64,000 nucleotides of DNA from positions 186,001 to 250,000 of IMG/VR virus record IMGVR_UViG_3300027710_000011; one strand, 5' to 3'. Both the position numbers and the translations under genes were made by a program. The stretch's first letter is position 1. Every line of letters starts with the position of its first letter. Positions 2,339 to 25,291 of the stretch are shown piece by piece. Under the pieces are notes generated by a model that saw only the letters and a list, made by a program, of their open reading frames with translations, made no database searches and was not told the DNA's origin.

Positions 2339-3811
2339 CTAGATATTACCAAAGCCGCCAGTGGCCAGCTCATCAATGTTGACGGACTTGACTTGCACCA
2401 GCGATTCCATCAGGTTGCTGAAGTCGCAAGCAACTTCTTGGATGTGATCGTTGTACGCAGTCAGCACTGGGGCGCTCAAAGCGTCAGCAAACGTAGGTGC
2501 AGAGAACGAAACCTGCGGACCTGTGTCCAGCTGAATAGTGATCTGCGAGAACTCCGTCAACGCGATGTTGGCGAAGACGTCGTAACCAATGCCGTTGCGC
2601 ATTGAGATGTCGTCCAGCAGTTCCTGCTGGATACGATGCTCAAGCAGCGACAAGCTTTGTGGCGACAAGACCATTTCGTTCACCAACGGTGTGGCGTACG
2701 GGATCTGGATGAACGCCCGGCCCGAATAGTTCGTAGCCTGAACGATCATGTGGCGCAGGCCGAACTCAACCATCAGCGCGGGGAGGCTGTTGGACAAGAT
2801 CGTTGCAGCCACTGTTTCCATGTCCGAACCACCCCAGCCATTGAAGTTGAATGCGTCCACAGATGCATCCAAGCCATTGGCCATCTTGACCACCGGAGCC
2901 GATGTCAGCACGAAGCAACGCTCGTCGAGCGTCCTGTCGATATTCATCAGATCTTGGTAGGTGAAGAAGTTCGACACACTGGTGTTGTTCATGCCGCTAA
3001 TCGTACGGATGAACTCGTCGCTGTTGATGCCCTTCGTACCGGACAACATGCCGTAGGTATCAGACATGATCTGGGACGGCTGTTCACTCTGGGTCTTGGC
3101 GGCAGCCATCGCGTAGCTGCCGATCATTTTGCCAGTGTAGTTGGACGACAGCGAGTTCTCGCGATACGAGAGCTTGGGCACACTCGAATTGCTTGACCGC
3201 AGGTCAACCAAGTCGGAGGTCATCATTGGCTGCGTCTGAATCGCACCGATGACGTCTTGGGGACGCATGGAGAGATTCTTGTATGGGTTGGTACCCATAA
3301 CCGACGCTGGACCGGAGTAGTTATTGTTCGCCAAGATGTGGTACGAATCCACAATCGTGGGAACACTGTTCCAGCCGTGACCGTTGTTGATGCGCGTATC
3401 ACGCAAGGTCGTGATCGAGTTGATGAAGAACTGCATCCGTGGATCGAAGTTCCCACCGTGCGACTGATCCGTGTAGCTGGTGTAGCCCTGGATCACTTCA
3501 CGCGTTTGACCGCCGAGGTAGTTGTGCACGATCACTTCCATCGTGTAGTAATAACGCTCGGTGTTCCAGTCGTTGGGAATCAAGATCTGTGACTCAGGCG
3601 CTGCTGACGGCCGCATGAATTCACCGGAGATACCGGCGAACAATTGCGGAGACGCCTTTGCGCCGGTATGACCCACTTGGTCAAAACGCTCTTGAAATTG
3701 GCTGATGACTTGGCCTTGTCCGTTGGTCGTGAACGGACGACGATACTGATCGCCGTAAGTTCCGGAACGTGCCATTGTCAGGGAAACAATTTCGATCCTT
3801 TTATTTGTCAT
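2339..3811 (-). CDS. picA: Phage-nucleus protein import factor PicA/Imp1 (phiKZ gp69-like)
   Basis: 490 aa, directly downstream of gp68 in the conserved Chimalliviridae block; size and position match. Confidence 0.7.
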   Translation of the reverse strand: MTNKRIEIVSLTMARSGTYGDQYRRPFTTNGQGQVISQFQERFDQVGHTGAKASPQLFAGISGEFMRPSAAPESQILIPNDWNTERYYYTMEVIVHNYLGGQTREVIQGYTSYTDQSHGGNFDPRMQFFINSITTLRDTRINNGHGWNSVPTIVDSYHILANNNYSGPASVMGTNPYKNLSMRPQDVIGAIQTQPMMTSDLVDLRSSNSSVPKLSYRENSLSSNYTGKMIGSYAMAAAKTQSEQPSQIMSDTYGMLSGTKGINSDEFIRTISGMNNTSVSNFFTYQDLMNIDRTLDERCFVLTSAPVVKMANGLDASVDAFNFNGWGGSDMETVAATILSNSLPALMVEFGLRHMIVQATNYSGRAFIQIPYATPLVNEMVLSPQSLSLLEHRIQQELLDDISMRNGIGYDVFANIALTEFSQITIQLDTGPQVSFSAPTFADALSAPVLTAYNDHIQEVACDFSNLMESLVQVKSVNIDELATGGFGNI

Positions 3812-3847
3812 TTTTTGCGTACTCCTAGGAGCTGGTTGTCGCGATCG

Positions 3848-5633: not shown

Positions 5634-5716
5634 CAAGTTAGCTTTCAGTTGACTCACAGTACAGAAGATAACATTTATATGTTTTTTATTACCTATATAT
5701 GGTAAAAAATTAACAT

Positions 5717-5752
5717 CATAAAAGCCACCGGGGAGTACCCGGTGGCTTTATT
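5717..5752 (-). terminator. Terminator of chmC
   Basis: CATAAAAGCCACCGGG-gagta-CCCGGTGGCTTTATT. Confidence 0.85.
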
Positions 5753-5780
5753 AAGTAACGTTTAAGTTACCAGGACTTGC

Positions 5781-6497
5781 TTACCAGCTTTCGATATCGT
5801 CCATCGAATCTTCGACAGCAGGCTTGCCACCGCCACCATTGCCGCCACGGTTACCACCGTAGCTGTTGCCACCACCGCCTTGACCGCCGCGGTTACCGCC
5901 ACCGAAGCCACCGCCGCCGGCAGGCTTCTGCTCGGGTTCGACGTACTCAACCACGGCCAAGTGAGCCATGATCTTTTCCATCAGGTTGACCCAGCCCAGA
6001 GCAACGCGCTGCGAACCTTCGCCCTTGGACAGAGGAGTACCGTCGGACTTGATGAAGTTGTGGTACTCGTTCTCGCCGAACTGGAACTTGATCACCGGAC
6101 GACGTGGGGCGCTGATCGAGATGTAGACCACACCTTCTGCGTCCTTGCTGACGATCGTGCTCGAAACGATCGAGGGCTTTTCGGAACGCTGGCCGCCGCC
6201 CCAGGTGAAGTTCTTGTTGTCGATCTTCTCGCGGTACTCGCCAGGAGCATTGGCCGCCGTAGTGATCAGTTGTAGCAGAGAGAAGAAGGTCAACATATCC
6301 ATGTTGGCCGTGATCTTGCCGTAGTCGACGGTGTCCTCGGGATCATTGGTGTACACCACCATGCGAGGATTGTTCTTCACCAATTGCATGGCCAGCGAAG
6401 CCATCTTGCCCTTGGAGTTGGGGGAGTACAGCTTGAGCTTGGAGTTGTCCAGTGCGTTCTTTTGACGAGGAGGTGCGCGAAACTTATTGTCAGACAT
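5781..6497 (-). CDS. chmC: Nucleus-associated RNA-binding protein ChmC (phiKZ gp67-like)
   Basis: 238 aa between gp66 and gp68; Gly/RGG-rich disordered tail ending acidic (DDIESW); strong C/G-ending codon bias. Confidence 0.7.
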   Translation of the reverse strand: MSDNKFRAPPRQKNALDNSKLKLYSPNSKGKMASLAMQLVKNNPRMVVYTNDPEDTVDYGKITANMDMLTFFSLLQLITTAANAPGEYREKIDNKNFTWGGGQRSEKPSIVSSTIVSKDAEGVVYISISAPRRPVIKFQFGENEYHNFIKSDGTPLSKGEGSQRVALGWVNLMEKIMAHLAVVEYVEPEQKPAGGGGFGGGNRGGQGGGGNSYGGNRGGNGGGGKPAVEDSMDDIESW

Positions 6498-11450: not shown

Positions 11451-12080
11451 TCACAGCTTACCGCAGAACGGTGAAGTCGGATCTTCTTTTCCAGGGAGCA
11501 TCATGGTCTTGATGAAATCCCAGGTCGAGAGGATCTCGATCTTTTCCGTCACAGACAGCTGAACGTCAGCTGCACTTTCGTCCAGATAGTTCACGCACTG
11601 CCATTCGTATTCTGGATCGTCTGGAGTTTCTTCAACGAGTCCAGTGTTGACCAAGCGCCAGTCGTAATGATCACGGCCGATCGAATCGGGCGCCACGTCA
11701 ACGTAGCTATTTGAATAGCCATCACATTGTTGACGATGATACAACTCACGCACGCCAGGGCTCGCCATAATCCAGCGTTGCATCTTTTGGCCAGCTTGTT
11801 GAACAGAACCCAGGGTCTTGAGTTCACGAACACAATCTGAATCAAACGCATGCTGGACCGTACGAACCGCTGCCTTGGCCAAACGAATGGCTTCAGATCC
11901 ACCGTATTTCTCGAACACTTGCAGGCCGCGATTGACGAATGCTTCGCCAGCTGCCGCCATCGTATTTGAGAAACTGGTAAGTCTTTCTTCAAGGAAATTC
12001 AGGTTGGCTTGGGTTGGCACACCAAACGCGATTGCGTCAAAGTTTGCCTGCCCATGCCCGCCTTGAATAAATACGGGCAT
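11451..12080 (-). CDS. Conserved core protein (probably phiKZ gp59/Imp3-like)
   Basis: 209 aa downstream of gp55; gp number inferred from synteny. Confidence 0.6.
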   Translation of the reverse strand: MPVFIQGGHGQANFDAIAFGVPTQANLNFLEERLTSFSNTMAAAGEAFVNRGLQVFEKYGGSEAIRLAKAAVRTVQHAFDSDCVRELKTLGSVQQAGQKMQRWIMASPGVRELYHRQQCDGYSNSYVDVAPDSIGRDHYDWRLVNTGLVEETPDDPEYEWQCVNYLDESAADVQLSVTEKIEILSTWDFIKTMMLPGKEDPTSPFCGKL

Positions 12081-12103
12081 CTCGGTTTCCTTTTTTCGAT
12101 TGG

Positions 12104-13594
12104 TTAGACCGCTAAAGCCATCATGCGCTGTAGCTTTACCGGATCAGCAGGTTCTTGCAATGATTCAATCCACTCCGCCGTAGTAGCTACCACTGGTTTG
12201 GATAGACTTGCGGAATTGGACATCGATCGAACAGAGTCGATACCGTAGACGCTCATGTAGGGCGCTAAGGTTTCAAGTTTCTTTTCGATCACTTGGTCAA
12301 CAGCCAGCGTGAATTGCAGAGCATCGCCGTCAAAGTCGCAGTTCAGCGCCTTAACGATAAGAATACTCAGCGACACCGTCGGATCTTGCACGTCGGTTTT
12401 CACGCGCGAGATATAGACGTGCTGGATAGATCCACGACCAAGGGATGGGTTTCGATTCAGCGTGCAACTGATACCGACACCGCTTGGAGCTTCTGCGATC
12501 AGTTCTTTGAACAACGAATCCAGGAAAGGATTATAGTGCTCAGCATGCTCATCGATGAACCGGCAAGCTTCATTGGGCGTATAGTCCAACTTCAGCAGCT
12601 TGTTCTTCAAGTGTTCACGCAAAACTGACGTAGCAACGCCCCAGGGAATGTAGATTTCCCGGTGATTGTGAGCCTTGGTAATTGATGACACCACAGCACG
12701 GAAGCTGAAGTGTGACCGGGAAGCAACCACGTGTTTGCGGAAGGTTCCTTCTTTACCAGCCAAGGTATCACGGTAAGTCAGTTCAAAGTACTCGGCCAAC
12801 TGGTTGATCGATTTGACCGTCCGGTTTTCCTTAACGTACGTTTGGAACATGTTGGAGTCTGTGTCAATACCCGCGAGGATATGCACAGCGTCCATTGCGC
12901 CAGTCGTGATTGTGTCCACGAACCAGCCCAGGTCATTCTGTTCCAGCACCAAAAGCGAACGGTGCGGGATTGGAAGATACTGGCAGAAAATCTTGTCACG
13001 CTCAACCTGCAACAAGCGCCTCAAGTTATCGCCTTTACCGCGGTTCTTGCGGAAAAGAGGATGCTCGAATAACTCATGCATGATTTCATCGAAGTTGTCG
13101 ATGAAGTAGTTCAAACCACGATCGATGGGTTTCCCCTTGATCTTGATCTGTTCGATCATGTACAGCTTTTTAGGCGGAACTGCTGTTGGCGAATACATGG
13201 TATCGCACAACCACTGAATGATGTTGAACTTTCCGAAGCCCGATTTGAAACGGTTCTTCATCATAGTCCAGATCAGGGGATTGATCAGAGCACGCACGCC
13301 TTTCGGTGCACGCAACCACGTGATCGGTTCCAGATCCTGATCGAAGATCGGCTTAACGGATGTTCCGCAATGTGCGCAACGCACGCCGATGTTGTATTCA
13401 CCAGTCACTTCACCACACTCGCAGGTCGGGACATTGCTGAGCAAGTCTCCTGAGAATCTAGTAAAGATCAGGTTTTCCAACTTCTTCGCATCGTCTTCAG
13501 AGAAAGACGGTACATCGTTGATGATGACGGCTTCACCACCGCTGCGCTCACGATAGAGCTTGTCGAAATCAACTAACTGGGCGTAGGTCCCCAT
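12104..13594 (-). CDS. Non-virion RNAP beta' N-terminal subunit (gp55-like), uninterrupted
   Basis: CECG...CAHC zinc finger, NRNPSL, catalytic NCDFDGD, GKEGTFRKH. Confidence 0.93.
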   Translation of the reverse strand: MGTYAQLVDFDKLYRERSGGEAVIINDVPSFSEDDAKKLENLIFTRFSGDLLSNVPTCECGEVTGEYNIGVRCAHCGTSVKPIFDQDLEPITWLRAPKGVRALINPLIWTMMKNRFKSGFGKFNIIQWLCDTMYSPTAVPPKKLYMIEQIKIKGKPIDRGLNYFIDNFDEIMHELFEHPLFRKNRGKGDNLRRLLQVERDKIFCQYLPIPHRSLLVLEQNDLGWFVDTITTGAMDAVHILAGIDTDSNMFQTYVKENRTVKSINQLAEYFELTYRDTLAGKEGTFRKHVVASRSHFSFRAVVSSITKAHNHREIYIPWGVATSVLREHLKNKLLKLDYTPNEACRFIDEHAEHYNPFLDSLFKELIAEAPSGVGISCTLNRNPSLGRGSIQHVYISRVKTDVQDPTVSLSILIVKALNCDFDGDALQFTLAVDQVIEKKLETLAPYMSVYGIDSVRSMSNSASLSKPVVATTAEWIESLQEPADPVKLQRMMALAV

Positions 13595-13627
13595 TTGTTG
13601 TTTTGTCCTATTTTTTCAGCTGGGTTG

Positions 13628-13661
13628 AAAAAAAGAGAGCCCCTGCGGGCTCTCTTTTATG
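13628..13661 (-). terminator. Terminator of chmA
   Basis: AAAAGAGAGCCC-ctgc-GGGCTCTCTTTTATG. Confidence 0.85.
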
Positions 13662-13685
13662 CTTTACTCTCAGTTACCTGAGAGC

Positions 13686-15734
13686 TTAGCGCCAACGGCC
13701 CAGGCCAGTGTTCAGGCTGTTTGCCGGACCTTGGGAGGTAGGCATACCGCGATTGAACAGGTTGCTGGCGCCGTTGAGGCCGCCGGTTGCTTGGGCCAGG
13801 AAGCTGGCTTGACCACGGCTGCCGGAGACGATGTCCATGTACGGAGTTTCCGGACGGATCGACAGGCCGGCGTCGGCCATTGCTGCTGCCAGGGCATCCA
13901 GGAACTTGTTGCGGAAGGTCATGCGACGAGCCGCACCAGTCACGGTCAGACCAGCAGAGATCTGGCGAGCGATCTTCAGGCGCTCATGCTGACGCTGTTC
14001 CCACGAGTAGTCCAGCTGAGTGAAGGTGTCCGACCAGGCACGGCCTTGCTCAGGATTGGTGGCGCCCAGGACGTTCAGCACGCACAGTTGGTCGATTTCA
14101 CGCAGGTCAAGGGTACGGCCCTTGTTGTCAGTGAAATAACCCAGGTGGATGCGGTTCTCGTCGTTCACCATCACCGGCTCGCCGTCGGCGAAGTACTTGG
14201 CCATGTGACCACCGGTCAGCAGGTTGGCCGCGTCGATGATGTCTTGGTTGGCGCGAGGATTGCAGGTGGCGTTGGCGAACACAGAGTTCTGCCAAGTGCT
14301 GGCGCCGCATTCTTCAACGTCGATCGAGATGACCAGCTCAGGACGCACGAAGGCCGACAGCAAGCTGTGCAGATCGTGAGGCGTGAAGGTGTTCGAACGG
14401 GTCTGGTCGAAAGGCTTGCCGAAGCCGGAAGGATCGTTGCCATTGTTGACTTCGATGCCGATGGCGCCGATGTCGTGATGGTTGGCGTCCAGGCCGGCCG
14501 AGCGAGCGAAGGCGCCCATCCAGTTGTTCTGACGCTTCAGGATGTTGACGGCAGCCAAACCCCACAGCCAGCCAGGCAGCGTTGCCAGATCGCTCGACGA
14601 TGTGTCAGTGATCACGAAACGCGGCAGGTACTTGTAGGGCATCTGGTTGGGCAGCGGAGCCTGAGTGGCGAACGGCGAAGCGAACTGGTTCTGCTGCGCG
14701 CCCATCATGCTCTCGTTTTCCCACCACATCAGGTCCAGGAAGCCGCCGATCTTGAAGATCTCGGTGTTGACCTGGCCGCTGTTCAGCGACTGGATCACAT
14801 TGCGCTTGCCTTGTTGTTGGCCGGTCACCAGCGAGTAGCTCACCACGACGTCTTGACGAACGGGGTTGCCCACGCTGTCGCTGCCGTTGGGCTGGTTGTA
14901 GGTCAACTTGGCGACGGAGTCCAGACGGCCACCGGCAGCTTGCAGCAGCTCGGGCAGTTCCAGGTCCTTGAAGTCGGTCTTGACGGTTGTGTTCAAGATC
15001 GTGCCGCAAGCGGTCAAGGCGTTGGCCAGGGTACGCTGAACCAGGTTCAGGTCCTTGTAGTTGTAGCCCACAGGGATCACTTCGGCTTCAGCGTCGTAGA
15101 TGTTGATGCCGGGGTACAGCGAAGTCAGGGTTGCTTCCACCACGCCGCGGTAGTCTTCGTCGTAGGCGTCGCCGACAACGCGCTGCAGTTCGATGATGGC
15201 GTTGGTACCGGGAGCGGTCAGTTGTTGCACAGGCAGTTGCTCAGCCGTGTCGGCCAGCAGCAGAACGTGGCAAGCGACGCCGGCGTTCGGGGAATCAGCC
15301 AGGCGGACGCACAGGACAACGGCGGAAGCGAACAGGCGAGTAGCGGACTCGTTGGCGTTGATCGGCACGATCTCGATGTTGTAGCCGGTGTCTTTGGCTT
15401 CCAGCGTCGAGCGAATCGATTCGATGAACTTCTTGATGGCGTCAGCGGCAGGAGCGGACGACAGAGGCGCGGTGTTGCCGGAACGCAGGAGCGACAGCAG
15501 ATTCGAGGTTTGGGTAGACATAGTTGTTTTCAGCTGATTGGTTGTTGCAGGTACTTTTGCCGTGGCGACCGGCATCGGTTTCGTGGGAACAGCAGGAACG
15601 ACGGGCTTTTGCGAGATCAGTGCACTGGGCATCGCAGCGGCCATAGCCGTTTCATTCTTGACAGGGCGCTCAGCCTTTGGTGTGGGCACACCGCTGACTG
15701 GAGAACCTTGCTCTTCGTCGTCGACGTGAAGCAT
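13686..15734 (-). CDS. chmA: Chimallin, major phage-nucleus shell protein
   Basis: 682 aa immediately upstream of gp55; chimallin-like segments (ISIDVEECGASTW, NRIHLGYF, DLREIDQL); extreme codon bias. Start may be 15521. Confidence 0.9.
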   Translation of the reverse strand: MLHVDDEEQGSPVSGVPTPKAERPVKNETAMAAAMPSALISQKPVVPAVPTKPMPVATAKVPATTNQLKTTMSTQTSNLLSLLRSGNTAPLSSAPAADAIKKFIESIRSTLEAKDTGYNIEIVPINANESATRLFASAVVLCVRLADSPNAGVACHVLLLADTAEQLPVQQLTAPGTNAIIELQRVVGDAYDEDYRGVVEATLTSLYPGINIYDAEAEVIPVGYNYKDLNLVQRTLANALTACGTILNTTVKTDFKDLELPELLQAAGGRLDSVAKLTYNQPNGSDSVGNPVRQDVVVSYSLVTGQQQGKRNVIQSLNSGQVNTEIFKIGGFLDLMWWENESMMGAQQNQFASPFATQAPLPNQMPYKYLPRFVITDTSSSDLATLPGWLWGLAAVNILKRQNNWMGAFARSAGLDANHHDIGAIGIEVNNGNDPSGFGKPFDQTRSNTFTPHDLHSLLSAFVRPELVISIDVEECGASTWQNSVFANATCNPRANQDIIDAANLLTGGHMAKYFADGEPVMVNDENRIHLGYFTDNKGRTLDLREIDQLCVLNVLGATNPEQGRAWSDTFTQLDYSWEQRQHERLKIARQISAGLTVTGAARRMTFRNKFLDALAAAMADAGLSIRPETPYMDIVSGSRGQASFLAQATGGLNGASNLFNRGMPTSQGPANSLNTGLGRWR

Positions 15735-17277: not shown

Positions 17278-19419
17278 TCAGTAATAATCAGAACACAGGT
17301 GGGTGATTTTATCCGTCGTTGCGTAGTAACCAAGTGTCTCCAAGATCAGATAGAAGATCTTAGAGATGTCGGCAACGGAGCGACGCATGTCCAAGTAATC
17401 CACCAGCTCTGCAGGCATTCCGGTGAGTTCCAGATTGGACTGCGGCAAAAGCAGAGAAGTGATAGCGCCAGTCTTGTCGTTATCAATAAGCCACTTTTGC
17501 ATACGAGCTGCGAGATCTTTGTCCTTGATGTTCTCAACCCACTGACGAACCTGACCGGCAGATTGCAAGTCCAAACAAACCTTGGCGGCAGCGTATGGTG
17601 GGGCGGGAGCAGGGCCGTATTTGTCAGCAAAGACTTTCTGCCACAAATCGTAGAACTGATACGGTGAACCCATCGCACCTTTCTTGTACGAGCTTGCGCC
17701 CTTGATCTGTCCGCCACGCATGTACGTGGATTCACCGGCGATAATTGAACGCATAACTTCACGCTCAACATCAGCAACCTCTTTGAGATATGCGATGAGA
17801 CTGATCTTCTTGTTATCCAGTACTGTTTGCATGATGCGTTTCATCATGTCCTCAGCCTGAGCAACAATCTTCTTGGGCACGTTGGAAGACTTCAGGTGAA
17901 CACCCTTGATCTCCATCTTGTACTTCTTGTAGATATTGCCTTCTTGCGAACTAATGTACGCAAAGTAGTGTTTACCTACTTGAGTCGGAACGAACACGTC
18001 GAACTTGTATTCGTTCTTCATGGCCACCTGATGGATACGGTCAGCTTCGATACCGAAGTTGGCAGACATCATGGCCAGCACGTGAGTAATGGATTCAGCA
18101 GCCAAGAAAATCATGGTTGCCGCCAGACCAGACGTACCTTCTGTAAAGCCTGGAGAATCGCCGTAATACCAGAACACCCAGTCCTGCACGGTGAAAATCG
18201 TGGAGTCAGTATCTGAAGTCAAAGCAGCACGACGAATGCTGTCTGGGAAGAAACCCAGGGAAGCAGGTACGTTGGTTGTTCCCAGGAACGTACGAATGAA
18301 GGACTCGTACGCCATGAGCGTGTCGTTGATGTTGATGATCGTGGCAGCAAGATCTTTCTCCAGCTGTGTACCCACGATCTCTTTCATCTGTAGACCACGC
18401 ATTTCGATAGGGAACAACTGCGCGGCCAGAAGCCGGTATTCTTCACGATAGGTGTCGAATACTTTCTTCGGTTCTTCAACTGTGGAACCCGTAACTTTCT
18501 TGGACAACCTGCCAAGGAATTCACGCATCGTACCGTCGTTGAATTTCATCAGGTGATACAGATCACCCGTGTACACAAAGGCACTGCATTGTTCAGGCGT
18601 CAAGTTATACACCAGCTCACGGATCATGAGCATGTGTTGCTCACTGCGCCAATACAAGTCGGTGGAGAAACGAATGACTTGCATCGTTTCTTCGTGTGTG
18701 ACGTGACGAATGCCAAAACGCTGCATGACTTCACGCAAGTTGTCGTAATTCGTGTGATTTGTCACAGCCACGATGTTGTTGATCACGATCTCGTGATTGT
18801 GATAGTGGCGATTACCACTCAACATCTTCTCGTTATTTGCATTACCGTAACCAGAAGTGGTGCGGCAGTTCGATGTCAGAGTCGAATGTGATGTCCGATT
18901 GAACAGAGGTGTCGAGTTAGACACGTGTGCGCCGGAGATCGAGTTGTTCGATAGTTTCTTGTTGTTCTGCTCGTTCTTCTTGAACAACTGCAGAATTTTG
19001 TTACCAGCCATTTCAGCAACATACATGGCTTTCTTAGCCACACTACGCGCTTTAACGTTAATGCCGATAAACGTAGCCAAGATAGATTTCTTGACCTTGG
19101 GATGCAAGTACGTTGTGAACGTTGGTGCAATCAGTTCACGAGACTTGATGGATTCGTTCAGGTAACCCAAGAAGGTTGTTGTCTTCTCGGTACGGTCACC
19201 ATTCTCACCACGTTCCAGGTAGCGGACTGTCGGATCCTTAACAGCAAACTCACCACCTGGCTTTGAGTTCTTGATCACGTAAGCCAGACATTCGTCAAGA
19301 GGTGTCTTGGTCATGACGTGCAAGTAATGCGCGGCATCCAGAGCGTAGTTCTTAACGATATGCAGATCTCGCTTGTATTCCGTCTTCGGAAGCGTGAAAG
19401 GATTTGTGTGCGCAGACAT
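17278..19419 (-). CDS. Family B DNA polymerase, polymerase-domain subunit (gp50-like)
   Basis: KLSNNSISG, TSGYG, SDTDS and KGVHLKSS motifs; start at MSAHTN with AAGGAG SD. Confidence 0.9.
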   Translation of the reverse strand: MSAHTNPFTLPKTEYKRDLHIVKNYALDAAHYLHVMTKTPLDECLAYVIKNSKPGGEFAVKDPTVRYLERGENGDRTEKTTTFLGYLNESIKSRELIAPTFTTYLHPKVKKSILATFIGINVKARSVAKKAMYVAEMAGNKILQLFKKNEQNNKKLSNNSISGAHVSNSTPLFNRTSHSTLTSNCRTTSGYGNANNEKMLSGNRHYHNHEIVINNIVAVTNHTNYDNLREVMQRFGIRHVTHEETMQVIRFSTDLYWRSEQHMLMIRELVYNLTPEQCSAFVYTGDLYHLMKFNDGTMREFLGRLSKKVTGSTVEEPKKVFDTYREEYRLLAAQLFPIEMRGLQMKEIVGTQLEKDLAATIININDTLMAYESFIRTFLGTTNVPASLGFFPDSIRRAALTSDTDSTIFTVQDWVFWYYGDSPGFTEGTSGLAATMIFLAAESITHVLAMMSANFGIEADRIHQVAMKNEYKFDVFVPTQVGKHYFAYISSQEGNIYKKYKMEIKGVHLKSSNVPKKIVAQAEDMMKRIMQTVLDNKKISLIAYLKEVADVEREVMRSIIAGESTYMRGGQIKGASSYKKGAMGSPYQFYDLWQKVFADKYGPAPAPPYAAAKVCLDLQSAGQVRQWVENIKDKDLAARMQKWLIDNDKTGAITSLLLPQSNLELTGMPAELVDYLDMRRSVADISKIFYLILETLGYYATTDKITHLCSDYY

Positions 19420-19475
19420 GGTTCTCCTTTTTCTACAAATCATGTCTGGTTCCTGTAAAAAAGAGGCGGCATATT

Positions 19476-19506
19476 AGCCAGAGGGGACTTCCCCTCTGGC
19501 TTTATG
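19476..19506 (-). terminator. Terminator
   Basis: AGCCAGAGGGG-actt-CCCCTCTGGCTTTATG. Confidence 0.75.
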
Positions 19507-20002
19507 TTGTTTCTTTCTGTGGCACAGCTATCTTTCTAGAACCTTCTTGAATTCTGAAAACCATAGCTCTTGTCTCAATCATCTTGCTTGATGCTTTCAA
19601 GAAACTAGGGATGTCCTTGAACTCTACAAAATCCGTCTTGTAATGACTTCCCAAGCGATAAGCTGCATCGCCCCCGCCGTGCATAAACAAGTGTGCTAAG
19701 CAGTAAAGTTCTTTACCATCTTTGGTAAAATAGAACTCATGCTTCTTGTATACGCATAATTGAAGCTGCGTATGGTAGATATTGTCCGAATAATTGGTGA
19801 TGAAGATTCCAACTAAACGTGCTTCGTCGTAAAACGGATTGATGAATTTCTTGATTCTGAACGCTGCTGGCTTAAATCCGTGGTCACGCATCAGCAAGAA
19901 TAACGGATCACGCTTATCAACCAGCGGGTTAATGAACCATTGGTATTTACTTAGTAGCCGCGCTACGAAACTTCTCCACATGTGATTACTCCAGAGTCTC
20001 AC
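19502..20002 (-). CDS. Hypothetical protein
   Basis: 166-aa ORF, start uncertain. Confidence 0.6.
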   Translation of the reverse strand: MRLWSNHMWRSFVARLLSKYQWFINPLVDKRDPLFLLMRDHGFKPAAFRIKKFINPFYDEARLVGIFITNYSDNIYHTQLQLCVYKKHEFYFTKDGKELYCLAHLFMHGGGDAAYRLGSHYKTDFVEFKDIPSFLKASSKMIETRAMVFRIQEGSRKIAVPQKETT

Positions 20003-20014: not shown

Positions 20015-20240
20015 AAAAAAATAAAAGGTGATGAAACCCTCAGACCTTTCGGAGCTTCTCGCAGCACACGCTCGAGGGCTCTTAAGATCTGAGGGGAACC
20101 AATTCCATCAGGTGTTGCAAAATGGAACAACCGTTTTCATTTTGCTTCACCAATCCTGATCGAGAAAAAGGATCGAAAACTCTTTCAGGATTGTGATTCG
20201 AAGATAACCAGTCTTCGCTCAAACTATAGTGTCCTATAGA
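20015..20240 (-). ncRNA. Candidate structured non-coding RNA or leader
   Basis: Five or more hairpins in ~220 nt ending in a U-tract (see findings). Confidence 0.45.
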
Positions 20241-20255
20241 TATTTTTTTACGACC

Positions 20256-20669
20256 TTAAGGAATCGGAATTGGATTCAAGCTCACTGTGACGCTGTTGAA
20301 TCCATTCATCAACAAGCATTGACGAACGCGATCAATGTCTGTAGTCTTAGCGTCTTCAATCAGAACATGGATTCTGGTTGTAGCGCGCGGCGTGATTGTG
20401 GTTTGGTTGATCCACGTGATACCGAGAACGGTTTTGATGCCGTTATTCAATGCCACCTTAACGTAGTAATACGCTGTGGCGTCATCAATTGTTCCGGCCG
20501 GCAGATAAGGATAGACTGCGGCGTGCAGTGCATCAATGTCTGCGATCTGACGAGCAGAGTCGGCATCGAGAATACCGAGGATGGTCACATTCGTGTAGTC
20601 ATTCGGGATGACTGTGGAAGGGTAGACTGAAAAGTCGTACACCTTACCTACTTCAACAGGGTAAGTCAT
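20256..20669 (-). CDS. Conserved jumbo-phage hypothetical protein
   Basis: 137 aa (GKVYDFSVYP...VTILGILD...H..VYPYLP). Confidence 0.75.
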   Translation of the reverse strand: MTYPVEVGKVYDFSVYPSTVIPNDYTNVTILGILDADSARQIADIDALHAAVYPYLPAGTIDDATAYYYVKVALNNGIKTVLGITWINQTTITPRATTRIHVLIEDAKTTDIDRVRQCLLMNGFNSVTVSLNPIPIP

Positions 20670-20727: not shown

Positions 20728-21219
20728 TCAATTTAGAGCTTCATCAAGCCAGCGATGATACGACACAGGAACGTAGCCGTTATACAGCGGGCGCAGATTT
20801 GGCGTTGGAGGAAGATTGGACTTTACGAATTCCAACAACACAGCTTCTCCAAACACTTCGACCTTACCAAGCCGACGTTTCACTTCTGAAACAGGAACTT
20901 GGTAAGTATCGAAATTAGACAGCATTGCGTCCATGAAAGTCCACAATGCCTGTACTAACGTATCGCGCTCTACACCGTCAAATGCTTCCACCTCATCGAT
21001 GATGGCATCTAACGGCGTGTTCTCCCAATCAGTACGTTCTTCAAGGACGATCCAAATTAGCTGTAATAGCACGGAGTTGAGCCTCGAACGTAGTCGCGTT
21101 GCCATCGAGGTATTTTGCCGTACCTGGTAAAACATTCTGGCTATGATCCCGTCGATTGGAAAAACCACTGACGAAGGTAACTTGTCGTTGAAGGTTGTTG
21201 ACATGACGCTGTCTCGCAC
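20728..21219 (-). CDS. Array member G, hypothetical
   Basis: VVFPI near the N-terminus and GEAVLLEF near the C-terminus; start uncertain. Confidence 0.65.
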   Translation of the reverse strand: MRDSVMSTTFNDKLPSSVVFPIDGIIARMFYQVRQNTSMATRLRSRLNSVLLQLIWIVLEERTDWENTPLDAIIDEVEAFDGVERDTLVQALWTFMDAMLSNFDTYQVPVSEVKRRLGKVEVFGEAVLLEFVKSNLPPTPNLRPLYNGYVPVSYHRWLDEALN

Positions 21220-21703
21220 GATCTTCGGTTAGGAAGGGGACGCCGATCTTTTCTAGCACAAGGGCCGTTCCGATGATCGTACTGATTTGGTAGAACAAAC
21301 GATCGCGATGGTAAAGCTTGTAATCATTGAAGATTTTCAACAAAGCTTTACCCATCTCTTCACGAGCAGAGATGTAATCGACCACGTCTTGATCCATTTG
21401 GGAGATTGGTTCTTGCTCCTCTTCTCTTCCAGCCATGCAGATAGCTGCATCCACAGGCGTCATCTCGTAACTACTGTACGCCAGCTCGTGCTCGGCATCA
21501 GTTTTCTGCGCCAAGCATTCGATCAGATCGGCCACAGCCGCTTTGATTTCGATACCGAGTTCCTCGTACTTGCTGATCGCGGCTTCGAAGCGTTTCAGAG
21601 GTTCTTCAATATCGACTACCAAACGCGTCGGTAGTCCTGGAGCAGAATCAGTTTGTTGCACGTCATCTCCTGGATCGAGTTCTGAGGATGATTGAGTGTT
21701 CAT
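21041..21703 (-). CDS. Array member F, hypothetical
   Basis: Clear similarity to member E; C-terminus overlaps member G. Confidence 0.7.
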   Translation of the reverse strand: MNTQSSSELDPGDDVQQTDSAPGLPTRLVVDIEEPLKRFEAAISKYEELGIEIKAAVADLIECLAQKTDAEHELAYSSYEMTPVDAAICMAGREEEQEPISQMDQDVVDYISAREEMGKALLKIFNDYKLYHRDRLFYQISTIIGTALVLEKIGVPFLTEDRARQRHVNNLQRQVTFVSGFSNRRDHSQNVLPGTAKYLDGNATTFEAQLRAITANLDRP

Positions 21704-22097
21704 CGATTATTCCGTGATAGCTGTATCGAAGCTCGCCGTCAGTATAGAGGCGATAACCTTCGAATTCTTGTTTTAATTGCTGGCCAAGTTTCTTAGCCAG
21801 AGCCACGATGTGTTCAAGGCCGAGTATGTTTTCTTCAGGAGACTCGTAGAAGCTGACCTCATCACTAGGATATAGCATCGGTCCACTACGACTACCTAAA
21901 AATTCATCTCGCAGCATGGTTCTTCCGAGATGAAATAACTCAGCCTCAGCCTCCCTGACAGAAGACACCGAATCAATCACGAGATCAATCACTGCTTCGA
22001 AATCGATGCAGGGAAGCTCTGGTTGATCAAGCGCTCGTTTAAACGCTATTAAGCTATTCTGCACAGGTACGATAAGCAGTGGTGATTTGTTCATCAA
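21663..22097 (-). CDS. Array member E, hypothetical
   Basis: LGQQLKQEFEGYRLYTDGELRY resembles MGKALLKIFNDYKLYHRDRLFY of member F. Confidence 0.7.
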   Translation of the reverse strand: MMNKSPLLIVPVQNSLIAFKRALDQPELPCIDFEAVIDLVIDSVSSVREAEAELFHLGRTMLRDEFLGSRSGPMLYPSDEVSFYESPEENILGLEHIVALAKKLGQQLKQEFEGYRLYTDGELRYSYHGIIDEHSIILRTRSRR

Positions 22098-22115
22098 TAA
22101 ACACAGGGGTTGGGA

Positions 22116-22574
22116 TTAAAAATCTACCGTCACGATGTAATGCATATTCGTTCCCACCATGGGTTCAACAGCATGTACATGCAAGTCGCTAGAGCCAAAC
22201 AACTGCCGCATCTGCCTCAGGACGTATTCTTCCAAAAGCTCTGTAGCAATCTTCACGTTGGTAAATAGACCGAGTAAATCAATCGGTCCGGTGTTCACCT
22301 GACACTCACCTTCTATCCATCTTTCCAGATCACAGATGATGTGATTTGGGCTGACGAAATAGTGGTCGTCCGGAATGCACGTAGTTGCCAATGTGATTTC
22401 GATAGCGTCCTTCAAACCTCGTGGGTAGAAAAAGAACGCTCTAGACATATCTCCTAGTTCGAGATACGCCTCATCGAATGGCACTACGTATCGCCTCTTC
22501 CGGGATGGCCTTTGATGAAATCTCTGGCGGTAAGTCCTCTGTAACGGGTACATAGACGACAAGATCCGTTTCAC
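22116..22574 (-). CDS. Array member D, hypothetical
   Basis: YVVPF...GTNMHYIVTV; overlaps member C. Confidence 0.65.
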   Translation of the reverse strand: MKRILSSMYPLQRTYRQRFHQRPSRKRRYVVPFDEAYLELGDMSRAFFFYPRGLKDAIEITLATTCIPDDHYFVSPNHIICDLERWIEGECQVNTGPIDLLGLFTNVKIATELLEEYVLRQMRQLFGSSDLHVHAVEPMVGTNMHYIVTVDF

Positions 22575-22935
22575 CTGGTGGATAGAAGAAGTAATGGTTG
22601 GTTGGACGCATCACCATGGAGGGGAAAGTGCTTGACAAGACATCAGCAAGTAGACCCATGTAATCATGCATCTGGATATCTACTTGCAACGCTTGTTCTT
22701 CAGTGATCACTTGAGGTATGAGTTGGCGATAAATGCCGACAACGCCCGAGTACTTTCCGTAACGACCGACTCGATCAAAGAAGACGTTGTTCAGCATCTC
22801 CATCATGATACACGATAAATCGATATCACGACCATACGCGAGTTCATCACGCATTACAACGAGAATGTCGGCAATGGAGATTTTGTACTGAATGTACAGT
22901 TGGGATGCTCCCATGGACGGACGTGTTTGGTTCAT
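22471..22935 (-). CDS. Array member C, hypothetical
   Basis: YKISI...ETDLVVYV; probable start MNQTRP. Confidence 0.65.
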   Translation of the reverse strand: MNQTRPSMGASQLYIQYKISIADILVVMRDELAYGRDIDLSCIMMEMLNNVFFDRVGRYGKYSGVVGIYRQLIPQVITEEQALQVDIQMHDYMGLLADVLSSTFPSMVMRPTNHYFFYPPGETDLVVYVPVTEDLPPEISSKAIPEEAIRSAIR

Positions 22936-22942
22936 CGTTCGT

Positions 22943-23710
22943 TCACAGTCCTGTTTTCTTGAGATGCTGAGCTTCCCAAGAGTTGATACGGAAATCACCT
23001 TTCTCGATCAGCAGGAAGTCATTGCCGCGCATACGCTGCAATTCGAATTCCATCCACGGATGCGAGATCAAGTGATCAGCGATTGGCTGAATGATCGAAT
23101 AGCAGAGCTGAATAATTCGGCTCAGGAACACGCCGAAGACGTGGTCTTGTCCAGGCACAGGCATGATGCCGCGCATGTATTCGATTGTGACTTCGTTCAA
23201 ATGCTCGTGAACTTCAGCCATTTTGGTTCGATCGTACGTTTCCATGATTTCATACTTGATGAACTTGTGGAAACGATGATACAGGTTACCTGTACCCAAC
23301 ATCTTGTCTTCTGTGTGCGGATACCAGCAACGCGACATCTCGATGAACGTTTGCAGATATTCCATAACGATGCGATGACCGATGACTGGGATTTGCGGGG
23401 TCAGTTGCAGATCACCAACTCGGTAGACGCGCATTACGCGTGTTCCTTCATCGCTATAGACCATACCTTTCACAACCGCGAGGTTAGTTACCTCACGCTT
23501 GTTAAGCGTATTTGGCTCTTGCAACCAGTAGATTGCAGGCATGCCGGAACGACTGCGGTAAGGCAGGCAAGGTTCCAGATCGGTACTGCGATAGTACCCT
23601 TCTTCAGGTTCGATCAAGATCTCACCGAAATCTTGCTCAATCAGAGTTGGTATTTCTGCAACTCCTAAGACAAACACCTTTTGTGATTCATTCATTTTTG
23701 CTATTTCCAT
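22943..23710 (-). CDS. Array member B, conserved hypothetical
   Basis: 255 aa ending GNDFLLIEKGDFRINSWE. Confidence 0.7.
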   Translation of the reverse strand: MEIAKMNESQKVFVLGVAEIPTLIEQDFGEILIEPEEGYYRSTDLEPCLPYRSRSGMPAIYWLQEPNTLNKREVTNLAVVKGMVYSDEGTRVMRVYRVGDLQLTPQIPVIGHRIVMEYLQTFIEMSRCWYPHTEDKMLGTGNLYHRFHKFIKYEIMETYDRTKMAEVHEHLNEVTIEYMRGIMPVPGQDHVFGVFLSRIIQLCYSIIQPIADHLISHPWMEFELQRMRGNDFLLIEKGDFRINSWEAQHLKKTGL

Positions 23711-24123
23711 GTAACGATTACGGCATCGCCTAGCTTGTCTAAATACACGACCTCAGGGAAGTCGTGCGTTCGAATCACTGAGTCAAGGCATGTTGAAAAG
23801 AACAGTTCGTAATCAGAGATCGCTGTGGTTACCATGATATCTAATACACGAACTATGTCAAATCTGTACTCGCTTTCAGTCAGGTGTGGTGAATGAATTC
23901 CAGCCACTACTTGAACTAGGAAGCGGTTCTCTATTAGTCTTTTTGTTAGTTGGTACAAGTATTGTTCCAGCAAGAACTTATGTTCTAGCGAGTTAACAAT
24001 GCTCGCATCTACGACTCGTAGAGATCTGAGATGTGCTTCTTTTCTTACCTTGACCGCGAATGGCTCGAGAGGCAACACAACGCCTTTAATGGGATGTCCC
24101 ATCTGAGCTCCTATCAGGATCAT
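23701..24123 (-). CDS. Array member A, hypothetical
   Basis: VVLPL...GDAVIVTW. Confidence 0.65.
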   Translation of the reverse strand: MILIGAQMGHPIKGVVLPLEPFAVKVRKEAHLRSLRVVDASIVNSLEHKFLLEQYLYQLTKRLIENRFLVQVVAGIHSPHLTESEYRFDIVRVLDIMVTTAISDYELFFSTCLDSVIRTHDFPEVVYLDKLGDAVIVTWK

Positions 24124-24240: not shown

Positions 24241-24283
24241 ATAAAACCAGTGTTGCGGGTTAAGCAACACTGGTTTCTTTATG
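24241..24283 (-). terminator. Terminator of phuZ
   Basis: AAACCAGTGTTGC-gggttaa-GCAACACTGGTTT. Confidence 0.85.
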
Positions 24284-24289
24284 CTGTGT

Positions 24290-25291
24290 TTACAGCACGA
24301 TGCCGGAATCAGTCGGCTTGTCGGAGTTGCTCAGGATCGGGCCGTTATCGACGCGGGCTTTGACAGCCTTCTCGATTGCGACCAGACGAGCGCTCATGTC
24401 CTTGGCAACAACGGCCGGCGTGTTTGCCAGCGTGACCAGTGACAGCGGAGCAATGTCCAGGACTTGACGGTTGACCTTTTCGTTCAGGTAACCGATCGAG
24501 CCGTATTCGGGAGTGAAGTTCAGGTCCAGCGTAGCGCCGGGCTTGAGCACCGAGACCACGGTGATGACGTTGCCGGTGGTGATGTCGTCCAAGTTCTCAG
24601 TTTGGTCGGACAGGTAGCGGACCAGGCCGACGACGCGAGGCTTGTAGCTGGTGACCTTGTCGAAGCGCAAGAAGTTGGCCAAGTCCATGCTGTCGAGTTC
24701 CGTATTCTCGCGAGAGAAAACAGTCATCAACGTGGAGACCAGTTCCACAGCGGCACGGTCCACAACAGCACGAGGAGTTTCCTTGCTGTTCTGGAAGTAG
24801 GCCATGACCACAGGCGTTTCGCGCTTCTGAGCAACACCTTCGTACGACTTGAGGGTGTTCAGCGTGTTCTTGATTTCCAGAGCACTGTCGGTGCCGCCGA
24901 TGGTGATGACCACGGTGGGAATGCCGTCGCTCAGCAGTTCGGAAACCAGGGAAGGAGCAATCACACTGCCGGAGCCGCCGTGGGCCGAAGACAGAACGAT
25001 GGCCAAGTCGCCGGGTGGGAACTTCTGGAGGATGGAGCGAACATGACGACTGATCTCTTGGTAGTTTTCGGCACGAACCTTGCCGGAACCATCCATGCCT
25101 TCGAAAACCCAGGTGAACTCGGGCGGGAGGCCTTTGCTGTTGGACAGCGAGGTATCGATGTAGACCGGAGAGATGGTTGCCATCCCCAGTTCTTGTGCGT
25201 TGCGGAAGGGCTCAATCAACTTGGCAACGTTGATCCCCGCACCCCCTGCTGCGTACAGAGTGATGTTGCCTTTGCGTGTTTCAATTGTCAT
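24290..25291 (-). CDS. phuZ: Phage tubulin PhuZ
   Basis: AAGGAGINVA, DTS, GMDGSGK and GGSGS tubulin motifs; short C-tail DSGIVL. Confidence 0.95.
   Translation of the reverse strand: MTIETRKGNITLYAAGGAGINVAKLIEPFRNAQELGMATISPVYIDTSLSNSKGLPPEFTWVFEGMDGSGKVRAENYQEISRHVRSILQKFPPGDLAIVLSSAHGGSGSVIAPSLVSELLSDGIPTVVITIGGTDSALEIKNTLNTLKSYEGVAQKRETPVVMAYFQNSKETPRAVVDRAAVELVSTLMTVFSRENTELDSMDLANFLRFDKVTSYKPRVVGLVRYLSDQTENLDDITTGNVITVVSVLKPGATLDLNFTPEYGSIGYLNEKVNRQVLDIAPLSLVTLANTPAVVAKDMSARLVAIEKAVKARVDNGPILSNSDKPTDSGIVL

What the first reader, a model, noticed from the sequence alone, without database searches (positions are those of the whole stretch)
20728..24123. Tandem array of seven diverged paralogs between phuZ and DNA polymerase, candidate nuclear-import adaptors
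Seven consecutive ORFs share a layout: an N-terminal hydrophobic strand (VVLPL, FVLGV, YKISI, YVVPF, LIVPV, LVVDI, VVFPI), helices, and a C-terminal hairpin (GDAVIVTW, GNDFLLIE, ETDLVVYV, GTNMHYIV, EHSIILRT, GTALVLEK, GEAVLLEF). E and F are plainly homologous (DFEAVIDLVIDSV..EAEAEL vs EIKAAVADLIECL..DAEHEL; LGQQLKQEFEGYRLY vs MGKALLKIFNDYKLY). In phiKZ this interval contains the import-licensing genes imp2 (gp47) and imp5 (gp48), as I recall them. A shared-fold family could be a cargo-specificity repertoire for the PicA channel.
Basis: partly seen in the sequence, partly recalled or inferred. Interest (0 to 1): 0.7.

Follow-up and report, generated by a model that had tools for sequence, protein, structure and literature searches.

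The report
Phage nuclear-import adaptor-like gene cassette
Seven small genes between the tubulin and DNA-polymerase genes of an uncultured nucleus-forming jumbo phage form a widely conserved cassette. Its last three genes are related copies that sit where phage phiKZ keeps its import adaptors Imp2 and Imp4. One of them is predicted to dock on the import protein PicA at the patch that licenses Imp2 import in phiKZ.

Summary
The seven minus-strand ORFs are real. They are tightly packed, lie between two terminator hairpins, and keep their order and sizes in related phages.

"Seven paralogs" is only partly right:
- E and F are certainly homologous.
- G, in the third E-family slot, is probably homologous to them; D possibly.
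- B is the ortholog of phiKZ gp43.
- C is a separate family with only a weak link to B.
- A is an orphan.

The E family is large (1269 50%-identity clusters), has no Pfam or PHROG model, and its predicted fold matched only hypothetical proteins, almost all from chimalliviruses.

The commonest array order in relatives is x-B-C-D-E-E-E-SH3DP-Pol. phiKZ has gp43-gp44-gp45-gp46-gp47(Imp2)-gp48(Imp4)-gp49(SH3DP)-gp50(Pol). So F and G sit in the Imp2 and Imp4 slots.

No sequence or profile link to Imp2 or Imp4 was found, and the fold comparison is suggestive only.

A co-fold of F with the window's PicA passed its controls (0.71 against 0.00). The predicted PicA contact, residues 198-207, aligns with Imp1 223-232, the hot spot of Imp2-specific import-escape mutations in phiKZ.

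Best reading (confidence about 0.5): these are PicA-licensed, Imp2/Imp4-like import factors.

The parts
24290..25291 (-). phuZ (phage tubulin), the upstream anchor of the cassette
   Evidence: tblastn hits to annotated PhuZ genes at 33-42% identity; weak Pfam Tubulin match
24244..24276 (-). Terminator-like hairpin with a T-rich tail just after phuZ; about 120 nt of untranslated leader follow before gene A
23701..24102 (-). Gene A (133 aa from the ATG that has an AGGAG ribosome-binding site). An orphan in the first slot.
   Evidence: Only near relatives were found: 89% identity on a 2.3-kb contig and 47% in L086. No profile link to any other family.
22943..23695 (-). Gene B (250 aa), a member of the phiKZ gp43 family
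   Evidence: Reciprocal iterative HMM: the B profile finds phiKZ gp43, and the gp43 profile finds B at 2.4e-12. Present in 70 of the 85 loci collected, mostly as a single copy.
22471..22935 (-). Gene C (154 aa), a member of the slot-3 family found in 25 loci. Its 3' end overlaps the start of D by about 83 nt.
   Evidence: Orthologs at 61-65% identity. C superfamily links. hhalign to short B-family members 45-61%. Both frames of the overlap are conserved in L086.
22116..22553 (-). Gene D (145 aa), a member of the single-copy slot-4 family; a possible distant relative of the E family
   Evidence: D family of 27-28 loci. hhalign D-E 53% over 115 collinear columns, pairing YVVPF with LIVPV and the two C-terminal hairpins. 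The bridging family is 96% to D and 39-68% to E/F.
21663..22094 (-). Gene E (143 aa), the first copy (E1) of the E family
   Evidence: Family profile. AF2 model pLDDT 87.5, pTM 0.81: strand 6-10, four helical segments, long helix 86-113, hairpin 124-139. 75% identical to its L086 ortholog.
21041..21661 (-). Gene F (206 aa from a GTG with an AGGAG site), a diverged second copy (E2) in the slot of phiKZ gp47/Imp2. An acidic core (pI 4.5) is followed by a basic, poorly conserved 66-residue tail that overlaps G by about 164 nt.
21602..21637 (-). F residues 9-20 (GLPTRLVVDIEE): the family's most conserved motif, P-x-x-[LIV]3-D, predicted to pair with PicA
   Evidence: Interface list of the co-fold; motif columns in alignment A6
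20728..21204 (-). Gene G (158 aa), in the third E-family slot (E3), which is the slot of phiKZ gp48/Imp4. A diverged probable family member.
   Evidence: hhalign to E/F 78-94%. Slot order c2-c21-c44 here against c2-c3-c1 in 17 loci.
20256..20669 (-). SH3DP gene (PF20287, an SH3-fold domain associated with phage DNA polymerases), equivalent to phiKZ gp49; the downstream anchor
   Evidence: Pfam 1.2e-32, phrog_3235; blastp to phiKZ gp49 8.5e-15
19502..19981 (-). ORF I (159 aa, basic, pI 9.6), conserved at 50% identity in L086; the last gene before the second hairpin
19476..19501 (-). Terminator-like hairpin after ORF I, directly upstream of the DNA polymerase gene
17278..19419 (-). DNA polymerase (divDNApol), equivalent to phiKZ gp50
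   Evidence: 53% identical to the FLC9 polymerase and 37% to phiKZ gp50; PF20286 on the L086 ortholog
2339..3811 (-). PicA/Imp1 homolog (490 aa), the predicted docking partner of F
   Evidence: phmmer with phiKZ gp69 3.8e-24; co-fold
3191..3220 (-). PicA residues 198-207 (TSDLVDLRSS), the core of the predicted F contact. They align with phiKZ Imp1 223-232.
   Evidence: allele table of 10.1101/2024.03.27.586873

Best explanation
The seven genes are the local form of an old, syntenic chimallivirus cassette: phuZ, a variable first gene, B (the gp43 family), C, D, three E-family copies, SH3DP, DNA polymerase. In this window the cassette lies between two terminator-like hairpins.

E, F and G are three anciently duplicated copies of one small acidic alpha/beta domain. 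The domain has an N-terminal strand, a helical bundle with one long helix, and a C-terminal hairpin. D may be a fourth, more distant copy.

The E-family triplet fills the slot that gp46, gp47 (Imp2) and gp48 (Imp4) fill in phiKZ-like phages.

Most likely mechanism (inferred): these proteins are made in the cytoplasm and dock on PicA/Imp1 at the nuclear shell. The conserved P-x-x-[LIV]3-D strand would lie against the invariant D-x-R segment of PicA (residues 200-205). Import of the proteins would then be licensed there. As Imp2 and Imp4 do in phiKZ, they would carry or license particular cargo into the phage nucleus.

Shown here: gene order, family membership, and the model-based docking prediction with its controls.
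Inferred: orthology to Imp2 and Imp4, actual binding, import, and adaptor activity.
For: 1. The cassette and its order are conserved in 64 arrays. x-B-C-D-E-E-E is the commonest pattern, and the sub-family order c2-c3-c1 is identical in 17 loci.

2. phiKZ has the same anchors. gp43 equals B and gp49 equals SH3DP, with five main genes between them. E-family genes and gp44-48-family genes never occur in the same array.

3. phiKZ orf47 is imp2 and orf48 is imp4. Both are described as cargo-specific import factors (restated).

4. The model of PhiPA3 gp044 (pLDDT 82.8) has elements in the order b-a-a-a-a-long a-b-b, the same order as the E model. The paper names PhiPA3 orf44 as an Imp2 homolog. The two BFVD top-50 lists share 17 targets, and both lists consist almost wholly of chimallivirus hypothetical proteins.

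5. Co-fold of PicA with F residues 1-150: ipSAE 0.71, 0.70 and 0.74; best of 3 controls 0.00. The mark was reached by 58 of 80 solved complexes and 2 of 110 mismatched pairs. The runs share at least 56% of contacts and the partner's pLDDT is at least 76.

6. The predicted PicA contact residues T198, D200, L201, R205 and S207 align with Imp1 F223, R225, I226, R230 and S232. In phiKZ, 7 of 14 imp1-bearing single escapers of EcoRI-Imp2 and all 7 Imp2-escape alleles gained in dual escapers hit residues 223-232. D203 and R205 are invariant in 15 PicA/Imp1 sequences.

7. The genome encodes ChmA, Imp1, Imp3 and Imp6 but has no sequence homolog of Imp2 or Imp4.

8. All seven proteins are acidic (pI 4.7-6.3), as Imp2 (4.5) and Imp4 (4.7) are.

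9. The array proteins are 47-75% identical to their L086 orthologs, against 84-89% for the flanking PhuZ and polymerase. This fits partner-specific co-evolution.
Against: - No sequence or profile similarity between any of A-G and phiKZ gp44-48, even with deepened profiles.
- Direct structural cross-hits are weak. E against the SL2 gp47 homolog gives TM 0.30 and probability 0.13. The Imp2-homolog model against RP12 ORF008 gives TM 0.37. The Imp2-homolog model does not hit the two AFDB clusters that E hits.
- Same slot could mean non-orthologous replacement.
- Only one co-fold was possible. It used my own unpaired alignments, and the pass shows model confidence, not binding.
- The predicted footprint also touches the position aligned with Imp1 H300 (an Nlp2 allele). 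It misses other Imp2-selected sites (27, 88-90, 121, 171, 420, 459).
- The hot-spot match is one contiguous segment, so by chance it is roughly a 1-in-10 to 1-in-20 event, not a per-residue probability.
- The genetics show that this Imp1 patch licenses import of Imp2 as a cargo. It says nothing directly about adaptor activity.
- There are no expression or localisation data; the phage is an uncultured subsurface-metagenome genome.
Confidence: 0.5

Rival explanations
1. E, F and G are PicA-licensed nuclear cargo with a job of their own inside the phage nucleus, not adaptors for other cargo. One possibility is accessory factors of the replisome, encoded next to SH3DP and the DNA polymerase.
For: The cassette lies in one terminator-bounded block with the polymerase-associated SH3DP gene and sits directly upstream of the polymerase in all arrays. 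The Imp1 223-232 patch is defined genetically by import of Imp2 itself. The co-fold therefore supports 'is imported' more directly than 'imports others'.
Against: No nucleic-acid-binding or enzymatic motif was found, and there is no Pfam or PDB relative. The proteins are acidic. Three to four diverging copies per genome, with copy-number changes between lineages, fit a recognition repertoire better than a fixed replisome part. The proteins in the same slots in phiKZ are needed for import of Nlp1 and TopA.
Confidence: 0.22
2. The slot identity with Imp2 and Imp4 is non-orthologous replacement and the co-fold is a false positive. The genes would then be fast-evolving accessory proteins, for example host-takeover or anti-defence factors, unrelated to nuclear import.
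For: No sequence or profile link to gp44-48 and low direct TM-scores. The array proteins evolve much faster than their neighbours. They are small acidic proteins without known domains. Two of 110 mismatched pairs also reached the co-fold mark.
Against: Order and sub-family identity of the triplet are kept across very divergent chimalliviruses, which is unusual for host-specific accessory genes. The E-fold neighbours are almost all chimallivirus proteins. The co-fold contact falls on the very segment that genetics ties to Imp2. All three controls scored 0.00.
Confidence: 0.18
3. All seven genes, A to G, descend from one ancestral domain. A, B and C have simply diverged beyond detection.
For: The same strand / helices / hairpin reading is possible for all seven. 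Weak but full-length collinear profile alignments exist: short B members to C 45-61%, short B members to E/F 4-11%, D to E/F 9-53%. Short B-family members start with an E-like strand and end with a G-D-L hairpin motif.
Against: None of these links reaches significance. A has no link at all. The motif resemblance is a few hydrophobic residues.
Confidence: 0.3

Closest known systems
phiKZ Imp2 (gp47; PhiPA3 gp044) and Imp4 (gp48), cargo-specific nuclear import factors (Kokontis et al., preprint 10.1101/2024.03.27.586873)
   Same: F and G occupy the same genomic slots: the last two genes before SH3DP (gp49) and the DNA polymerase (gp50), downstream of the gp43-family gene. Size and acidity are similar. 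The Imp2-homolog model has the same order of secondary-structure elements as E. F is predicted to contact the PicA segment homologous to the Imp1 patch that licenses Imp2 import.
   Different: There is no detectable sequence or profile similarity, and direct fold scores are low (TM 0.30-0.37). Imp2 and Imp4 are reported only in Pseudomonas phiKZ-like phages, whereas the E family is spread over most other chimallivirus lineages. The two kinds never share one array. Function has been tested only for the phiKZ proteins.
Unnamed E family of chimallivirus hypothetical proteins (for example Ralstonia phage RP12 ORF008 and ORF009, RSL2 ORF005, Burkholderia phage FLC9 gp4 and gp5)
   Same: E and F are clear members (HMM E-values 1e-21 to 1e-30). 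They share the domain, its motifs (P-x-x-[LIV]3-D ... Y-x-x-G-x-x-x-Y ... G-x-D-[LIV]-V-L) and tandem placement before SH3DP.
   Different: In the window's lineage the second and third copies (F, G) have diverged into their own sub-families. F has gained a basic tail that overlaps G.
phiKZ gp43 family
   Same: B is a member by reciprocal profile search and sits in the same slot, as the second gene of the cassette here.
   Different: B is 250 aa against 357 aa for gp43; family members range from about 130 to 367 aa. No function is known for any member.
PicA/Imp1-dependent import by surface patches (Morgan et al. PNAS 2024, PMC11087766; Kokontis et al.)
   Same: The predicted docking of F uses a defined patch of PicA rather than a terminal signal peptide on a generic receptor.
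   Different: Here the contact is predicted to be made by a conserved N-terminal strand shared by a whole protein family. That would be a family-wide docking motif, which has not been described.

Membership tests
E family (unnamed chimallivirus small alpha/beta proteins) | Significant match to the family profile over the whole domain | tested here: met
   E and F: iterative HMM 2.7e-21 and 2.4e-26, hhalign 99.8%. The deep profile gives 1.2e-28 and 1.7e-32.
E family (membership of G) | Profile-profile match plus occupation of the third family slot | tested here: inconclusive
   hhalign 78-94% over 97-157 columns. The HMM hit is only borderline (0.027 for the L006 ortholog). The slot evidence is positive.
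E family (membership of D) | Profile-profile match | tested here: inconclusive
   9-53% directly; 39-68% through a bridging family that is 96% D-like.
E family (membership of A, B, C) | Profile-profile match or shared predicted fold | tested here: not met
   hhalign at most 11% to E/F.
phiKZ gp43 family (gene B) | Reciprocal profile hits and conserved position | tested here: met
   The B profile recruits phiKZ gp43; the gp43 profile hits B at 2.4e-12. Slot data.
Imp2 (phiKZ gp47) family | Sequence or profile homology to gp47 / PhiPA3 gp044 | tested here: not met
   phmmer and tblastn found nothing in the genome. hhalign at most 2.3% to any E sub-family.
Imp2 (phiKZ gp47) family | Genomic position: second-last gene before SH3DP and the DNA polymerase, downstream of the gp43-family gene | tested here: met
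Imp2 (phiKZ gp47) family | Shared fold | tested here: inconclusive
   Same element order and 17 shared targets among the two Foldseek top-50 lists, but direct TM-scores of 0.30-0.37. The two models could not be superposed directly with the tools at hand.
Imp2 (phiKZ gp47) family | Import licensed through the Imp1 patch around residues 223-232 | tested here: inconclusive
   The co-fold supports F docking on the homologous PicA residues 198-207: score 0.71, best control 0.00. This is a prediction only.
Imp2 / Imp4 adaptors | Required for nuclear import of a specific cargo (Nlp1; TopA) | not testable with these tools
   Needs genetics or microscopy in an infected host. The phage is known only from a metagenome.
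Chimalliviridae (the genome as a whole) | Encodes chimallin and the core import genes Imp1/PicA, Imp3 and Imp6 | tested here: met
   phmmer with phiKZ gp54, gp69, gp59 and gp67: 6e-32, 4e-24, 4e-28 and 4e-28.

The most novel reading that the evidence does not exclude
The whole phuZ-to-polymerase cassette (B, C, D and the E triplet) is an ancient, family-wide repertoire of PicA-docking import adaptors that grew from one strand-helices-hairpin domain. phiKZ gp44-gp48, including Imp2 and Imp4, would be its unrecognisably diverged orthologs. Each copy would dock through the same N-terminal strand onto the invariant D-x-R strand of PicA while presenting a different surface to its cargo. Cargo adaptors would then be a universal feature of phage nuclei, not a Pseudomonas-phage peculiarity.
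Probability: 0.25. Interest if true: 0.85.

Novelty: new variant of a known kind. Interest (0 to 1): 0.7.

Why it matters
The papers read here describe the cargo-specific import factors Imp2, Imp4 and Imp5 as confined to Pseudomonas phiKZ-like phages. How other nucleus-forming phages select cargo beyond PicA itself is open.

If the E-family triplet is the counterpart of Imp2 and Imp4, several things follow:
- Most chimalliviruses would carry adaptors at a fixed genomic address.
- A large uncharacterised family (1269 50%-identity clusters) would receive a function.
- A concrete docking mode would be on the table: a conserved strand on the adaptor against the D-x-R strand of PicA. It can be tested by point mutations in culturable relatives.
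- The prediction also explains, in structural terms, why the phiKZ Imp2-escape mutations cluster at Imp1 223-232.

Tried and rejected
- Pfam and PHROGs gave nothing for A-G.
- megablast of the region against GenBank phages found no match.
- The search for related loci failed with the SH3DP alignment (no conserved stretch) and with the single polymerase (no relatives). It worked only with a polymerase alignment.
- The first iterative-HMM script timed out.
- ESM Atlas by sequence: no usable hit and no model held. Atlas by shape: TM at most 0.43, meaningless.
- AFDB clusters with the Imp2-homolog model: nothing.
- The profile search with the Imp2-family alignment returned only 7 proteins and did not bridge to the E family.
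- I tried to identify by length which RSL2 proteins the E model had hit in BFVD. Only the 114-aa ORF007 could be matched; the 177-aa hit could not be assigned.
- Papers searched for data on phiKZ gp43-gp48 or their PhiPA3 equivalents (transposon, antisense-oligomer, core-genome and proximity-labelling studies) had no mention in the main text.
- Sequencing runs: no RNA data set holds the region, so no expression evidence; read laying was not used.
- dN/dS was not attempted because the closest full relative is too diverged (PhuZ 84% amino-acid identity).
- The sigma-70 promoter scan found fewer sites than in shuffled sequence and is not informative for a phage with its own RNA polymerases.

Full report
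WHAT IS THERE

The window is bases 186001-250000 of a single 276,772-bp contig. It comes from a subsurface metagenome.

The contig is a chimallivirus. It encodes homologs of these phiKZ proteins:
- chimallin (window 13686-15734)
- Imp1/PicA (2339-3811)
- Imp6 (5781-6497)
- Imp3 (11451-12080)
It also has PhuZ (24290-25291) and the divergent DNA polymerase (17278-19443). The closest named phage is Burkholderia phage FLC9, with 53% polymerase identity.

Seven minus-strand ORFs fill 20728-24123 without gaps. From ribosome-binding sites and ortholog alignments the likely starts are A 24102, B 23695, C 22935, D 22553, E 22094, F 21661 (GTG) and G 21204.

A hairpin with a T-rich tail follows phuZ (24244-24276). 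Another follows ORF I (19476-19501). So A-G, the SH3DP gene (20256-20669, PF20287) and ORF I look like one transcription unit placed directly ahead of the polymerase.

IS IT MORE THAN CHANCE?

Yes. The same seven genes, in the same order and with similar sizes, are present in a 271-kb Logan contig (L086) and in IMG/VR contigs L006 and L010. The pattern is nearly the same in FLC9.

Against L086, PhuZ is 84% identical and the polymerase 89%. The array proteins are only 47-75% identical: A 47, B 66, C 61, D 70, E 75, F 50, G 68. These are real genes, and they evolve faster than their neighbours.

ARE THEY SEVEN PARALOGS?

Pairwise blastp links only E-F (21% over 124 aa) and, weakly, F-G.

I built a local library from 80 polymerase-anchored IMG/VR loci plus named phages. 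I then ran iterative HMM searches, clustering, and all-against-all hhalign. The results:

- E and F fall into one family. Searches started from either gene converge on the same 105-111 local members, and hhalign gives 99.8%.
- A profile search of 1.84 billion representatives finds 1269 clusters at E <= 1e-3 and 421 at E <= 1e-10. Neither Pfam nor PHROGs has a model for the family.
- The genome has one more copy, outside the window, at contig position 83993-84520.
- G matches the E/F profile at 78-94%.
- D matches at 9-53%. The alignment is collinear and pairs the N-terminal strands and the C-terminal hairpins. D is also linked through a bridging family (96% to D, 39-68% to E/F).
- B is the ortholog of phiKZ gp43 by reciprocal profile search. 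The family is present in 70 of the 85 loci collected.
- C belongs to its own family of 25 loci. Its link to short B-family members is 45-61%, and to the full B family 30%.
- A has no relative beyond three close genomes.

THE CASSETTE

I mapped the families onto 64 arrays that have both anchors. The commonest order is x-B-C-D-E-E-E-SH3DP-Pol.

The three E copies are distinct sub-families in a fixed order (c2-c3-c1) in 17 loci. The window's lineage has c2 (E), c21 (F) and c44 (G) in those slots. This is an old triplication, not a recent expansion, and G is the positional heir of the third copy.

phiKZ-like loci read ...gp43(B)-gp44-gp45-gp46-gp47-gp48-gp49(SH3DP)-gp50(Pol). That is again five main genes between the same anchors, plus the small overlapping PHIKZ044.1.

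E-family genes and gp44-48-family genes never occur together in one array. By position, F corresponds to gp47 and G to gp48.

The preprint 10.1101/2024.03.27.586873 names orf47 imp2 and orf48 imp4; imp5 is orf287. It reports Imp2, Imp4 and Imp5 as conserved only in Pseudomonas phiKZ-like phages.

FOLD

The AlphaFold2 model of E, built with a 59-sequence alignment, has pLDDT 87.5 and pTM 0.81. Its elements are:
- helical segments
- a long helix at 86-113

Fold searches with the E model gave:
- BFVD: only hypothetical proteins, and nearly every named one from a chimallivirus (RP12, RP31, RSL2, Ea35-70, RAY, Noxifer and others).
- AFDB clusters: only two unnamed small proteins.
- ESM Atlas: nothing.

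I then modelled PhiPA3 gp044 (pLDDT 82.8), which the paper identifies as an Imp2 homolog. Its elements come in the same order: strand, helices, long helix, two-stranded hairpin.

Beyond its own family, its BFVD list shares 17 of 50 targets with the list for E, including bona fide E-family members. The direct scores are low, however (TM 0.30-0.37). Profile comparisons between the Imp2 family and the E family stay at noise level even after deepening. A shared fold is plausible but not shown.

DOCKING ON PICA

The chains were the window's PicA (14-sequence alignment) and F residues 1-150 (40-sequence alignment).

Result:
- ipSAE 0.71, 0.70 and 0.74 in three runs.
- Best of three controls 0.00.
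- Verdict: "supports binding; it does not show it".
- The mark was reached by 58 of 80 solved complexes and 2 of 110 mismatched pairs. These counts hold only roughly because my own alignments were used.
- The runs agree in at least 56% of contacts, and the partner's pLDDT is at least 76.

The most confident contacts pair F residues 11-17 with PicA residues 201-205. F 11-17 (PTRLVVD) is the most conserved motif of the family. F 113-116 and 130-135, at the sheet edge, also take part.

Aligned to phiKZ Imp1, PicA T198, D200, L201, R205 and S207 correspond to F223, R225, I226, R230 and S232.

Extended Data Table 1 of the preprint lists the imp1 alleles that let phiKZ escape EcoRI-Imp2. R230S/C/L, S231Y, I226T, F223S and S232G are 7 of the 14 single escapers that carry an imp1 change. 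All seven Imp2-escape alleles gained in dual escapers (S232N, I226T/F/M, R225W/Q) fall in the same segment.

D203 and R205 (Imp1 D228 and R230) are invariant in 15 PicA/Imp1 sequences.

So F, the gene in the Imp2 slot, is predicted to dock on the patch that genetically licenses Imp2 import. One imp2 escape allele, S30R, lies at the start of Imp2's own first strand.

Caveats:
- The match is one contiguous segment, so its chance probability is of the order of 0.05-0.1.
- Other Imp2-selected sites (27, 88-90, 121, 171, 420, 459) map outside the predicted footprint.
- One Nlp2 site (H300) maps inside it.
- E, G and phiKZ Imp2 itself could not be co-folded for comparison.

VERDICT

There is no detectable homology to Imp2 or Imp4. 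But the slot is the same, the architecture is compatible, and there is a control-passing docking prediction that coincides with independent phiKZ genetics.

My best explanation, at about 0.5, is that E, F and G are PicA-licensed, Imp2/Imp4-like import factors. The main rivals are that they are imported cargo with another nuclear role, or that the positional match is non-orthologous replacement and the co-fold a false positive.

The function of B (the gp43 family), C, D and A remains open.

Noticed in passing
window 21041-21204 and 22471-22553: Two long out-of-frame gene overlaps: the tail of F over the head of G (about 164 nt) and the tail of C over the head of D (about 83 nt). Both frames stay open in L086. 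Identity to L086 is 65% for the G head against 32% for the F tail, and 73% for the C tail against 65% for the D head. The basic tail of F therefore looks like weakly constrained read-on, while the C/D overlap looks like true dual coding.
   Followed up: partly
own genome G000:C1:83993-84520 (minus strand), outside the window: A further clear E-family copy (175 aa; HMM 5e-13) lies far from the cassette, in a run of small minus-strand ORFs. Its neighbours were not examined.
   Followed up: partly
L004 (Burkholderia phage FLC9) 12858-13388, plus strand: The GenBank record annotates a minus-strand gene (gp6, 12900-13265) here. The plus-strand ORF matches the E-family profile and completes the B-C-D-E-E-E pattern, so the deposited annotation is probably on the wrong strand.
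   Followed up: partly
window 19502-19981: ORF I is a basic 159-aa protein (pI 9.6) between SH3DP and the polymerase, conserved at 50% identity in L086. A 148-aa RP12 protein that matches by length the ORF in the same slot (ORF004) was a weak fold hit of the E model (probability 0.75, TM 0.42).
   Followed up: no
window 2339-6497 and 11451-15734: The core import and shell genes lie within 20 kb of the cassette on the same strand: homologs of gp70, PicA/Imp1, gp68, Imp6, Imp3 and ChmA.
   Followed up: partly
records behind L032 and L042 (handles G005 and G009): Each of these two relatives has a second, weaker PicA-like match (E about 1e-22, 25-26% identity) far from the first. This could be a PicA paralog or the gp68-like neighbour.
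   Followed up: no
L087 11740-12321, and the contig that carries P0004: An I-TevI-like homing-endonuclease gene (NUMOD3, I-TevI DNA-binding domain) sits just after the polymerase gene in two relatives. It is absent in L086, and none is evident in the window's ORF list.
   Followed up: no
window 20205-20255: The spacer after SH3DP holds an A-rich run followed by TATCTATAGGACACTATAG, a near-palindromic motif. It may be a phage promoter or processing site ahead of ORF I. I did not search for it elsewhere in the genome.
   Followed up: no
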